A DNA stretch of 37,314 nt from Octopus bimaculoides (GCF_001194135.2 NC_068997.1:28164861-28202174); one strand, 5' to 3'. Positions 10,059 through 11,358 are shown, counted from the first letter of the stretch. Notes: a model not told the origin generated them from the letters alone. Made by a program: numbers and translations.

Positions 10059-10146
10059 CTGATTTGGGAGGATATCTGTAGGCATTGTTATTACCATAAT
10101 CCACAACATCGGAGCCTGCATTTCTTCTGCTAACGAGCGAACCCAT
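10059..10146 (-). CDS. MGRN1: Mahogunin RING E3 ligase (MGRN1/RNF157 co-ortholog), coding exon 1, 88 nt; N-myristoylation-type start MGxxxS
   Basis: MGSLVSRRNAGSDVVDYGNNNAYRYPPKS(G), versus human MGSILSRRIAGVEDIDIQANSAYRYPPKSG. Donor CAG|GTTCGT at 10058. Confidence 0.95.
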
Positions 10147-10629
10147 TTTTGAAAATCCTAGAATGTAAATGTCTTTAAGATTTCTGAATATATAAACATA
10201 TCACTAAATGCAAGAAGACTTGAGCATGCTGTTGAGTATGCAAAAGCGATGAGAAAGAAGCGAGCATCGAGTCAAGATGCGACTTTGGTGGTCAACACAA
10301 TGGCGCCTACACAGCAGACGTCACCTCAACACATCACAAAAATACGAGAAAACAGGAGAAAATTTTTTTTTTTTTAATGTTCAACCAAAAGTAAATATCA
10401 TTGCCTTTAAAATTTTGATCTTGAATATAATAGTGAAAATATTACAAAAATATTTTAAAATAATTATTTAAAAATCTAGTCATTTTTAAAAGGGTTCTTT
10501 TCATTTTATTTATTTATTACTTTTTTTTCGATAGATTGTATAAGAGAATTTCTGCAGTGGGGGGAAGTTTAAATAACGGAATAGACATTAACATCAACAT
10601 TTTTGAATAGTAAACTCTGCCTACAAATG

Positions 10630-10645
10630 TTCATTGGCCAATGAA
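10630..10645. promoter_or_regulatory. Perfect 16-bp palindrome TTCATTGGCCAATGAA with back-to-back CCAAT boxes (candidate NF-Y site)
   Basis: The palindrome is directly visible; factor identity is inferred. Confidence 0.6.
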
Positions 10646-10664
10646 AAAGGAGCTTATAAATTAG

Positions 10665-10737
10665 GTTGTCAATCAATGCACCACAACAACATCTTCCAAG
10701 AGTGAAGCTTGTAAACTGTGTTGTCAATCACTGCACC
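10665..10737 (-). promoter_or_regulatory. Two TGATTGACAA motifs (PBX/PREP decamer-like) within an 18-bp direct repeat
   Basis: GTTGTCAATCAATGCACC (10665-10682) and GTTGTCAATCACTGCACC (10720-10737), 17/18 identical. Confidence 0.5.
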
Positions 10738-10852
10738 GCCGCCACCCCCACTATTGACACTACTACCGCCGTCACTGCCCCCCACCACCACTATTACTAC
10801 TACTACCACCACTCTCACCGCTACTACTACTACTACAGCAACAACAACATCT
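10735..10852 (+). repeat. Mixed (ACC)/(ACT)/(ACA) trinucleotide tract upstream of the UBALD start codon
   Basis: CCACCACCACTATTACTACTACTACCACC...CTACTACTACTACAGCAACAACAAC. Confidence 0.85.
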
Positions 10853-10910
10853 TTGGAATATTGAAGCCAGAAGTAGGTGAATCTTGGGGCATTGGTACCC
10901 AAACGAGAAA

Positions 10911-11018
10911 ATGGATAATTTAAAACAACAAGTGATGATTAACCAGTTTGTTTTGGCCGCTGGCTGTCATGCCGAACAAGCGAAACAGTTATTACAAGCC
11001 GCAAAATGGCAATTCGAG
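10911..11018 (+). CDS. UBALD1: UBA-like domain-containing protein (UBALD1/UBALD2 co-ortholog), coding exon 1, 108 nt
   Basis: [36 protein letters not shown], versus human UBALD1 [36 protein letters not shown]. Donor GAG|GTGAGT. Confidence 0.96.
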
Positions 11019-11274
11019 GTGAGTCTCTTATTTCCTATCTCTATTCTATTTCTATTTTCATGTCACTGAATAAATGAAAACAACATTCTTTCTAATGTCT
11101 CTCAGACATGAATAGAAGACTGTTATGGAAACATGGCTAATGTTTATCTTATGACGGCTAACATTCTCTTCTATAATTATAGCTTTAATTTCTACTGTAC
11201 ATTCTAATCAAATATTTTTTTCGATAATTATTAGTTTGACATATTAATATTTAATTTTAAATCTCTAATTTCAG

Positions 11275-11358
11275 GCAGCACTTAGTATGTTTTTCCAAGA
11301 TTCTTCTGTTCCCATGTGTCGAACGTGCAACGGCAGCCATGCGAACGGAAGCTATTCG
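11275..11358 (+). CDS. UBALD1: UBALD family protein, coding exon 2, 84 nt, phase 0
   Basis: Acceptor TTTCAG at 11269-11274 and donor TCG|GTGAGC. Encodes AALSMFFQDSSVPMCRTCNGSHANGSYS, versus human TALSTFFQETNIP. Confidence 0.92.

What the first reader, a model, noticed from the sequence alone, without database searches (positions are those of the whole stretch)
10059..11358. Ancient head-to-head MGRN1/RNF157 and UBALD gene pair: an E3 ligase coupled to a little-studied UBA-like protein
The sequence shows both genes diverging from a 764-bp interval. As I recall, human has the same divergent arrangement twice (MGRN1-UBALD1 at 16p13.3 and RNF157-UBALD2 at 17q25), separated by roughly 10 kb or more. 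The exon boundaries also match my recollection of the human genes (88 and 119 nt; a break after WQFE). The linkage would then predate the protostome-deuterostome split and survive vertebrate genome duplication and coleoid genome reshuffling. Inference: the genes are co-regulated and UBALD may be a cofactor or reader for Mahogunin-type ubiquitination, a partnership I do not know to be described. The pair may already appear in microsynteny catalogues.
Basis: partly seen in the sequence, partly recalled or inferred. Interest (0 to 1): 0.78.

Follow-up and report, generated by a model that had tools for sequence, protein, structure and literature searches.

The report
Ancient head-to-head MGRN1–UBALD gene pair
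In this octopus window a ubiquitin ligase gene (MGRN1/RNF157 type) and a small, barely studied ubiquitin-associated-domain gene (UBALD) start back to back 764 bases apart. The same arrangement holds in four other spiralian phyla and in a bird, so it is a real ancient gene pair of a known kind, but nothing yet shows that the two proteins work together.

Summary
On the minus strand lie MGRN1/RNF157-type exon 1 (10059-10146, 88 nt) and exon 2 (5309-5427, 119 nt). On the plus strand lie UBALD exon 1 (10911-11018, ending WQFE|GT) and exon 2 (11275-11358). The two start codons are 764 bp apart.

- **Pair kept:** the same divergent adjacency occurs in Haliotis, Lingula, Capitella and Lineus (470-1176 bp) and in a bird (MGRN1-UBALD1, 7.3 kb).
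- **Pair absent:** a bee, a horseshoe crab, a whipworm, a sea cucumber and a sponge. In a seadragon a FoxJ1-like gene, not RNF157, is the upstream neighbour. Lamprey is undecided.
- **Age:** the pair is at least bilaterian in age and was lost repeatedly.
- **Shared spacer:** it carries a recurrent CRE. TGACGTCA is present in three spiralian lineages and a 7/8 variant in octopus, which suggests a conserved promoter.
- **FoxJ1:** a FoxJ1-like gene also belongs to the old neighbourhood, but in octopus it now sits on another chromosome.
- **Function:** the idea that UBALD is a cofactor of Mahogunin-type ligases remains untested inference. I found no paper linking them other than as neighbours.

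Verdict: a new member of a known kind (a conserved ancestral microsyntenic pair), of moderate interest.

The parts
5309..5427 (-). MGRN1/RNF157-type coding exon 2 (119 nt; GSYFSSHFIMGGERFDMTQPEAYLFGENQDLNFLGNKPIP)
   Evidence: AG acceptor and GTAAGT donor; length and translation. 73-83% identical to the same exon in Lingula, Capitella and Haliotis.
10059..10146 (-). MGRN1/RNF157-type coding exon 1 (88 nt, starts at the ATG; MGSLVSRR... fits an N-terminal Gly2/Ser6 myristoylation-type start, which is inference)
   Evidence: Translation and GT donor. The same 88-nt exon plus GT occurs in Lingula, Capitella, Lineus and a bird; Haliotis has 91 nt.
10147..10910 (.). 764-bp spacer between the two start codons; putative shared or bidirectional promoter region plus both 5'UTRs (function inferred, no transcription start sites mapped)
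   Evidence: The equivalent spacers are 495 bp (Lingula), 788 (Capitella), 1103/1176 (Haliotis), 470 (Lineus) and 7273 (bird).
10300..10305 (+). ATGGCG, a YY1-core-like hexamer 10 nt from the CRE-like site (weak; Haliotis has ATGGCC just before its CRE)
   Evidence: a hexamer alone is not significant.
10316..10323 (.). CRE-like site AGACGTCA (7/8 match to TGACGTCA, keeps the CGTCA half-site), 170 nt from the MGRN ATG
   Evidence: It is the only such site in the 37-kb window. The full palindrome TGACGTCA lies in the equivalent spacer of Lingula, Capitella and both Haliotis assemblies, 70-369 nt from the MGRN ATG, against an expected 0.006-0.013 per spacer.
10631..10644 (.). 14-nt perfect palindrome TCATTGGCCAATGA holding two opposed CCAAT boxes, 267 nt upstream of the UBALD ATG
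   Evidence: Read from the sequence and located. CCAAT counts in the other species are not above chance, so function is inferred only.
10730..10850 (+). C/T/A-rich tract with ACT/ACC/CAA trinucleotide runs just upstream of the UBALD ATG (probably 5'UTR or promoter)
   Evidence: Read from the sequence.
10911..11018 (+). UBALD coding exon 1 (108 nt; most of the UBA-like domain, ends ...WQFE|GT)
   Evidence: Pfam UBA_8 E=2.9e-20; PDB 2DZL (human FAM100B/UBALD2) E=2.7e-19.
11275..11358 (+). UBALD coding exon 2 (84 nt; AALSMFFQDSSVPMCRTCNGSHANGSYS)
   Evidence: AG/GT borders; 100% identity to Octopus vulgaris UBALD1.
11359..37314 (+). UBALD intron 2 (continues past the window; exon 3 lies at window-equivalent 43948-44118). 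It is full of repeats and holds three assembly gaps.
   Evidence: Exon 3 found at G000:C17:28208808-28208978 with a polypyrimidine-AG acceptor; gaps listed.

Best explanation
This is a genuine conserved ancestral microsyntenic pair. The single octopus orthologue of vertebrate MGRN1/RNF157 (a RING E3 ligase) and the single UBALD gene (a UBA-like domain protein) are transcribed divergently from a short common spacer.

**Shown**
- The arrangement, orientation and intron positions are shared by five spiralian phyla and by a vertebrate. They therefore date at least to the last common ancestor of protostomes and deuterostomes.
- The pair was broken in several lineages.

**Inferred**
- The spacer works as a compact bidirectional or interleaved promoter. 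A break there would damage one or both genes, and that keeps them together. This is the 5'-5' co-regulation class of Irimia et al. 2012.
- A recurrent CRE on the MGRN side suggests a conserved ATF/CREB-type input.
- Any protein-level cooperation between the ligase and UBALD is a further, separate inference.
For: - Gene models and the 764-bp spacer.
- Orthology: Pfam UBA_8; 100% identity to annotated octopus UBALD1; the MGRN N-terminus matches RNF157-like_N/RING genes; the RING exons lie upstream on the same strand and the gene is single-copy.
- Divergent adjacency in Lingula at 495 bp, Capitella at 788 bp, two Haliotis assemblies at 1103/1176 bp, Lineus at 470 bp and the bird Passerculus at 7273 bp.
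- Mammalian co-location from gene lists.
- Conserved intron positions.
- A conserved spacer element. TGACGTCA occurs in three independent lineages where about 0.01 is expected in each. The octopus variant is the only such site in 37 kb. An unbiased k-mer scan recovers ATGACGTCA as one of two 9-mers shared by at least 3 of 4 spacers, against 0.4 expected.
- The pair persists where FoxJ1 has moved away: octopus FoxJ1-like is on C6.
- Irimia et al. 2012 (PMC3514665) report that conserved pairs are enriched in 5'-5' orientation, short spacers and co-expression.
Against: - No transcription start sites or expression data were available, so shared promoter use is not shown.
- Beyond the CRE there is no alignable spacer conservation: no 10-mer is shared by three species. 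Lineus has only half-sites. The bird spacer has no full CRE.
- The pair is absent in Apis, Tachypleus, Trichuris, Apostichopus and Oscarella, so the constraint is not absolute.
- In the bird the spacer is 7.3 kb, too long for a classical bidirectional promoter.
- Only +/-10 kb was inspected around each UBALD gene, and no cnidarian, amphioxus or hemichordate could be sampled.
Confidence: 0.7

Rival explanations
1. Protein partnership. UBALD is a ubiquitin-binding cofactor, reader or regulator of Mahogunin-type ligases. Selection for balanced co-expression of the two partners keeps the genes together.
For: - Both products belong to the ubiquitin system.
- The UBALD domain is a p47-type UBA-like fold. 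Its nearest solved relatives after human UBALD2 (2DZL) are the UBA domains of p47, OTUD7A and TDP2. The p47 and TDP2 domains are known to bind ubiquitin (established knowledge).
- The linkage has lasted more than 500 million years in two superphyla.
- UBALD1 is an unstudied 'Tdark' protein, so a missed partnership is possible.
Against: - No paper in the library connects them other than as chromosomal neighbours.
- The linkage was lost in at least five sampled lineages that keep UBALD.
- MGRN1 relatives work in plants (LOG2; from memory), while the UBALD hits I could name were all holozoan. UBALD therefore cannot be an obligate cofactor.
- Many conserved head-to-head pairs are functionally unrelated.
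Confidence: 0.17
2. Passive retention. The spacer is so short that rearrangement breakpoints rarely fall in it, and spiralian and vertebrate genomes rearrange slowly at this scale. The pair is a neutral relic with no regulatory or functional meaning.
For: - Spacers are only 0.47-1.2 kb in spiralians.
- The pair is broken in fast-rearranging lineages such as the nematode and the sampled arthropods.
- There is little spacer sequence conservation.
Against: - It survived the coleoid reorganisation that removed FoxJ1 from the neighbourhood.
- It survived in the bird lineage despite a 7.3-kb spacer.
- The CRE recurs far above chance.
- Irimia et al. found that such pairs exceed neutral expectation.
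Confidence: 0.2
3. Genomic regulatory block around FoxJ1. Enhancers of the cilia transcription factor FoxJ1 lie in or around MGRN/RNF157 and UBALD. Both genes are bystanders held in place by FoxJ1 regulation.
For: - A FoxJ1-like forkhead gene lies 5-10 kb downstream of UBALD in Lingula and Capitella.
- It lies head-to-head with a UBALD gene in a seadragon.
- Cichlids have foxj1b+ubald1a.
- The goat order is UBALD2-RNF157-FOXJ1.
Against: - The best octopus FoxJ1-like match is on contig C6, not C17, yet the pair is intact.
- No forkhead gene lies within 10 kb in Haliotis, Lineus or at the bird MGRN1-UBALD1 locus.
- The order of the three genes differs between spiralians and mammals.
Confidence: 0.08

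Closest known systems
Conserved ancestral microsyntenic pairs (CAMPs), co-regulated 5'-5' class (Irimia et al. 2012, Genome Res, PMC3514665)
   Same: Two unrelated genes adjacent in several phyla, with conserved divergent orientation and a short spacer. This is exactly the class that paper describes.
   Different: The pair is not named in the paper's main text, and its supplementary list is not held. I therefore cannot say whether it is among the roughly 600 catalogued pairs. Co-expression is not shown here.
Classical bidirectional-promoter pairs such as HSPD1-HSPE1 (HSP60/HSP10)
   Same: Head-to-head genes with a spacer under 1 kb (in spiralians) and products of one pathway class.
   Different: HSP60 and HSP10 are proven partners with a proven shared promoter. 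Here neither is shown, and in vertebrates the spacer has grown to about 7-10 kb.
Metazoan microsynteny blocks retained in cephalopods (Schmidbaur et al. 2022, PMC9023564)
   Same: An ancient linkage that survived the coleoid genome reorganisation. That paper reports that such blocks tend to be co-expressed.
   Different: Some of that paper's analyses required clusters of at least three genes, and its held supplements name neither gene. Here the three-gene version with FoxJ1 is broken in octopus.
Human UBALD2/FAM100B UBA-like domain (PDB 2DZL) and p47/NSFL1C UBA (PDB 1V92)
   Same: The octopus UBALD N-terminus aligns over 50 residues with 2DZL (E=2.7e-19) and more weakly with the p47 UBA (E=0.0045).
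   Different: To my knowledge ubiquitin binding by UBALD itself has not been reported. Some UBA-like folds, such as TAP-C, bind other ligands.

Membership tests
Conserved ancestral microsyntenic pair (5'-5' co-regulated class) | Orthologues adjacent in several distantly related phyla | tested here: met
   Adjacent in Mollusca, Brachiopoda, Annelida, Nemertea and Chordata (bird). Absent in 5 other sampled lineages.
Conserved ancestral microsyntenic pair (5'-5' co-regulated class) | Conserved divergent (head-to-head) orientation | tested here: met
   The MGRN-type gene is on (-) and UBALD on (+), with the 5' ends facing, in every positive case.
Conserved ancestral microsyntenic pair (5'-5' co-regulated class) | Correlated expression of the two genes | not testable with these tools
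   No expression data were available. The papers found only co-list the genes.
Conserved ancestral microsyntenic pair (5'-5' co-regulated class) | Conserved functional elements in the spacer | tested here: inconclusive
   A full CRE occurs in 3 lineages and a 7/8 variant in octopus, well above chance. Lineus has only half-sites, the bird has none, and no longer conserved block exists.
Bidirectional promoter pair (start sites less than 1 kb apart) | Transcription start sites of both genes within about 1 kb on opposite strands | tested here: inconclusive
   The ATG-to-ATG distance is 764 bp, but start sites and possible upstream non-coding exons are unknown. The bird distance is 7.3 kb.
MGRN1/RNF157 E3 ligase family | Conserved N-terminal region (RNF157-like_N) followed by a C3HC4 RING | tested here: met
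   The window exons match the N-terminus of genes carrying PF26192 + PF13920. Further exons and the RING (81% identity to Capitella) lie at C17:28157097-28163570 on the same strand. PF26192 itself could not be run.
UBALD (FAM100) family | N-terminal UBA-like domain (Pfam UBA_8) | tested here: met
   E=2.9e-20, 72 bits against a cut-off of 26; PDB 2DZL E=2.7e-19.
UBALD (FAM100) family | Conserved C-terminal motif NTPATPPNFP(D/E)AL | tested here: met
   Present in exon 3, 6.6 kb beyond the window. The motif is shared from sponge to vertebrates.
Genomic regulatory block centred on FoxJ1 | The target transcription factor gene stays linked to the bystander genes | tested here: not met
   The octopus FoxJ1-like exons are on C6:26.50-26.53 Mb, whereas the pair is on C17.

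The most novel reading that the evidence does not exclude
UBALD proteins are dedicated ubiquitin-binding partners of the MGRN1/RNF157 ligases. They would act, for example, as adaptors or product readers in the membrane-tethered ATRN/MEGF8-MGRN1 pathways or in TSG101 regulation. The divergent promoter would then exist to keep the two in fixed proportion. That would give a first function to two 'dark' human proteins.
Probability: 0.15. Interest if true: 0.7.

Novelty: new member of a known kind. Interest (0 to 1): 0.45.

Why it matters
UBALD1 and UBALD2 are conserved from unicellular relatives of animals to humans, yet no function is known for them. UBALD1 is classed 'Tdark'. Only 112 papers in the library mention either gene, and none of the 25 top-ranked has it in the title.

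A linkage to one particular E3 ligase family that has lasted since the bilaterian ancestor is a cheap, specific lead. MGRN1 and RNF157 matter for pigmentation, spongiform neurodegeneration, Hedgehog signalling and heart development (established knowledge).

For genome evolution the locus is a clean example of a tight two-gene unit that outlived the looser three-gene block with FoxJ1 during the coleoid reorganisation. By itself, though, it is one more of several hundred ancient pairs.

Tried and rejected
- **UBALD exon 3 in the window:** a regex for FPEAL/PPNF found nothing. The exon lies 6.6 kb past the window end.
- **Reaching cnidarian or other non-bilaterian UBALDs with the sponge protein as query:** only 4 hits, none useful. 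Thirty cluster representatives were named, and none was a cnidarian, amphioxus or hemichordate. The age beyond Bilateria is therefore undetermined.
- **Genome search with Pfam PF26192:** the family is not in that library. A stitched Capitella query replaced it.
- **Microsynteny catalogues:** the Irimia 2012 supplements are not held. The Schmidbaur 2022 supplements do not name the genes.
- **Literature on an interaction:** UBALD1+MGRN1, FAM100A+MGRN1, UBALD2+RNF157 and FAM100B+RNF157 gave only gene lists or nothing.
- **Longer conserved spacer blocks:** no 10-mer is shared by three species. CCAAT, SP1, ETS, NRF1, E2F and E-box counts are unremarkable.
- **Lamprey:** no gene and no MGRN exon within 10 kb upstream, so it is undecided rather than negative.
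- **Rfam scan of the window:** nothing.
- **Structure prediction of UBALD:** dropped, because a solved human homologue exists.

Full report
**What is in the window**

The window is G000:C17:28164861-28202174 of an octopus genome.

- **MGRN1/RNF157-type gene, minus strand.** An 88-nt coding exon starts at the ATG at 10146 and ends at 10059 before a GT. It encodes MGSLVSRRNAGSDVVDYGNNNAYRYPPKS. A second exon of 119 nt lies 4.6 kb further on at 5309-5427, with an AG acceptor and a GTAAGT donor. It encodes GSYFSSHFIMGGERFDMTQPEAYLFGENQDLNFLGNKPIP.
- **UBALD gene, plus strand.** An ATG at 10911 opens a 108-nt exon ending ...AAKWQFE|GTGAGT. An 84-nt exon follows at 11275-11358.
- **Spacer.** The two start codons are 764 bp apart.

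The only caveat is that MGRN exon 2 lies outside the stated coordinates.

**Identity of the two genes**

- The plus-strand peptide hits Pfam UBA_8 at E=2.9e-20.
- Its third and last coding exon carries the family's conserved NTPATPPNFPEAL motif. That exon sits 6.6 kb beyond the window end behind a polypyrimidine-AG acceptor. The gene therefore spans about 33 kb.
- A solved structure exists for the human homologue: 2DZL, 'Protein FAM100B', E=2.7e-19. The next relatives are the UBA domains of p47, OTUD7A and TDP2.
- The minus-strand peptide matches the first two exons of genes whose products carry RNF157-like_N plus a C3HC4 RING in Lingula, Capitella and Haliotis, and exon 1 of the bird gene.
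- Six more exons, ending in a RING that is 81% identical to that of Capitella, lie on the same strand just before the window.
- No second copy of the ligase gene exists in the genome.
- The octopus therefore has one pre-duplication orthologue of vertebrate MGRN1 and RNF157, and one UBALD gene.

**Is the arrangement conserved?**

I looked up the genomic surroundings (+/-10 kb) of UBALD genes from named species.

*Divergent adjacency with the MGRN-type gene*

| Species | Distance between start codons |
|---|---|
| Lingula anatina | 495 bp |
| Capitella teleta | 788 bp |
| Haliotis, two assemblies | 1103 and 1176 bp |
| Lineus longissimus | 470 bp |
| Passerculus sandwichensis (sparrow) | 7273 bp |

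In the sparrow, UBALD1 faces a gene whose product starts MGSLLSRRIAGVEDIDIQANSAYRYPPKS.

*Literature on mammals.* For mammals I have only gene lists. MGRN1 and UBALD1 fall in one human 16p13.3 association locus (PMC7338361). The goat order is QRICH2-UBALD2-LOC-RNF157-LOC-FOXJ1 (PMC5348779). From memory, the human pairs are divergent and about 10 and 25 kb apart. I could not test that.

*Adjacency absent*

| Species | What lies next to UBALD |
|---|---|
| Apis laboriosa | DTW-domain gene upstream |
| Tachypleus tridentatus | TUG/UBX gene upstream |
| Trichuris suis | retroelement genes |
| Apostichopus japonicus | nucleoside hydrolase gene |
| Oscarella lobularis (sponge) | TRIP4-like gene |

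A permissive tblastn found no MGRN exon in those flanks (the Trichuris locus, fetched later, was not searched this way). Lamprey shows nothing within 10 kb and stays undecided.

*Tally.* The pair is present in 5 of 5 spiralian phyla and 0 of 3 ecdysozoans. In deuterostomes it is present in a bird, absent in an echinoderm and undecided in lamprey, and a seadragon UBALD copy lacks it. It is absent in one sponge.

The simplest reading is a pair already present in the bilaterian ancestor, doubled with the vertebrate genome duplications and lost several times.

**Gene structure**

- MGRN exon 1 is 88 nt followed by GT in octopus, Lingula, Capitella, Lineus and the bird. Haliotis has one extra codon.
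- The first UBALD intron follows the WQFE/WQFQ codons in most bilaterians examined.
- The three-exon coding structure is shared with the bird.

**The spacer**

There is no alignable conservation, and no 10-mer is shared by three species. One element recurs.

- The full palindromic cAMP-response element TGACGTCA lies 70-369 nt from the MGRN ATG in Lingula, Capitella and both Haliotis assemblies. Only 0.006-0.013 occurrences are expected per spacer.
- The octopus has AGACGTCA at 10316-10323. This is the only such site in the whole 37-kb window.
- An unbiased scan returned ATGACGTCA as one of two 9-mers shared by three of four spacers.
- Lingula and Capitella also share GTACACATAAA at the same distance upstream of the CRE.
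- Lineus has only half-sites, and the bird has none.
- The octopus spacer also holds a 14-nt palindrome with two opposed CCAAT boxes at 10631-10644. CCAAT counts elsewhere are not above chance.

I take this as moderate evidence for a conserved promoter input on the MGRN side. It is not proof of a shared promoter.

**A third old neighbour**

- A forkhead gene lies just downstream of UBALD in Lingula and Capitella.
- One lies head-to-head with a UBALD gene in a seadragon.
- The Lingula and seadragon proteins share the FoxJ1-type domain and the N-terminal LDDSLTSL(N/Q)WLQ motif. The FoxJ1 assignment rests on my memory of human FOXJ1, so it is a lead.
- Cichlids have foxj1b next to ubald1a, and the goat has RNF157 next to FOXJ1.
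- In the octopus the best FoxJ1-like exons (75-82% identity, with the forkhead domain split between two exons as in Lingula) are on contig C6, not C17.

The looser three-gene neighbourhood was therefore broken, while the tight pair survived. That argues against the pair being held only as bystanders of FoxJ1.

**How it most likely works**

*Shown*
- The pair is ancient, and its orientation and structure are conserved.
- It is dispensable in several lineages.

*Inferred*
- The short spacer holds interleaved promoter elements of both genes, so that breaks are selected against. This is the co-regulation model of Irimia et al. 2012, who found conserved pairs enriched for 5'-5' orientation, short spacers and co-expression.
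- Schmidbaur et al. 2022 report that ancient microsyntenies retained in cephalopods tend to be co-expressed.

*Further inference*
- UBALD may act with the ligase. Its UBA-like fold and the shared pathway make that plausible.
- Against it: nothing in the searchable literature supports it, and the linkage has been lost repeatedly.
- Also against it: MGRN1-type ligases exist in plants (LOG2; from memory), where I know of no UBALD. The divergent UBALD hits I could name were all holozoan, reaching Syssomonas and Chromosphaera.

**Novelty**

The kind of feature is well known. This particular pair is not named in any text I could search, and the two catalogues most likely to hold it could not settle the matter. 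I rate it a new member of a known kind. Its main value is as a concrete lead to the function of two unstudied human proteins.

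Noticed in passing
L003 24170-26505 (+); L004 from 24200 (+); L009 3888-7694 (-); octopus G000:C6:26499104-26534048: A FoxJ1-like forkhead gene is an old neighbour of UBALD in Lingula, Capitella and a seadragon. Published gene lists place foxj1b next to ubald1a in cichlids and RNF157 next to FOXJ1 in goat. 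In the octopus it has moved to another chromosome while the MGRN-UBALD pair stayed intact.
   Followed up: partly
window 972-1577 (+), in MGRN intron 2: Remnant of a mariner-type transposase in two frames (Pfam Transposase_1, E=9.7e-18). The second fragment carries the typical ...PHPAYNPGLAPSDYYLF... stretch.
   Followed up: partly
window 5015-5268 and 7092-7345: A perfect 254-nt direct repeat 2077 nt apart, inside TG/CA-rich microsatellite sequence on either side of MGRN exon 2. It is either a very recent duplication or an assembly artefact.
   Followed up: no
window 8420-8429, 11700-12037, 15318-16033, 30303-30811: Four assembly gaps (runs of N). Three lie in UBALD intron 2, several next to AT or CT dinucleotide repeats. 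Small exons or elements could be hidden there.
   Followed up: no
window about 20180-29998, UBALD intron 2: At least five copies, on both strands, of a short interspersed element. Its translations repeat ...FDCGHAGA... / ...LTVAMLEHCL... (ORF list). This is probably an abundant octopus SINE-like family.
   Followed up: no
proteins P0184, P0260, P0183: UBALD-like proteins occur in the unicellular holozoans Syssomonas multiformis and Chromosphaera perkinsii and in the sponge Oscarella. The family therefore predates animals. The C-terminal TPxTPP(N/Y)FPEAL motif is already present in the sponge.
   Followed up: partly
L003 9590-9620 and L004 9558-9588: Lingula and Capitella share GTACACATAAA at the same 4-nt spacing upstream of the spacer CRE, with 20 of 23 positions identical. 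This is a possible composite element conserved between brachiopod and annelid.
   Followed up: no
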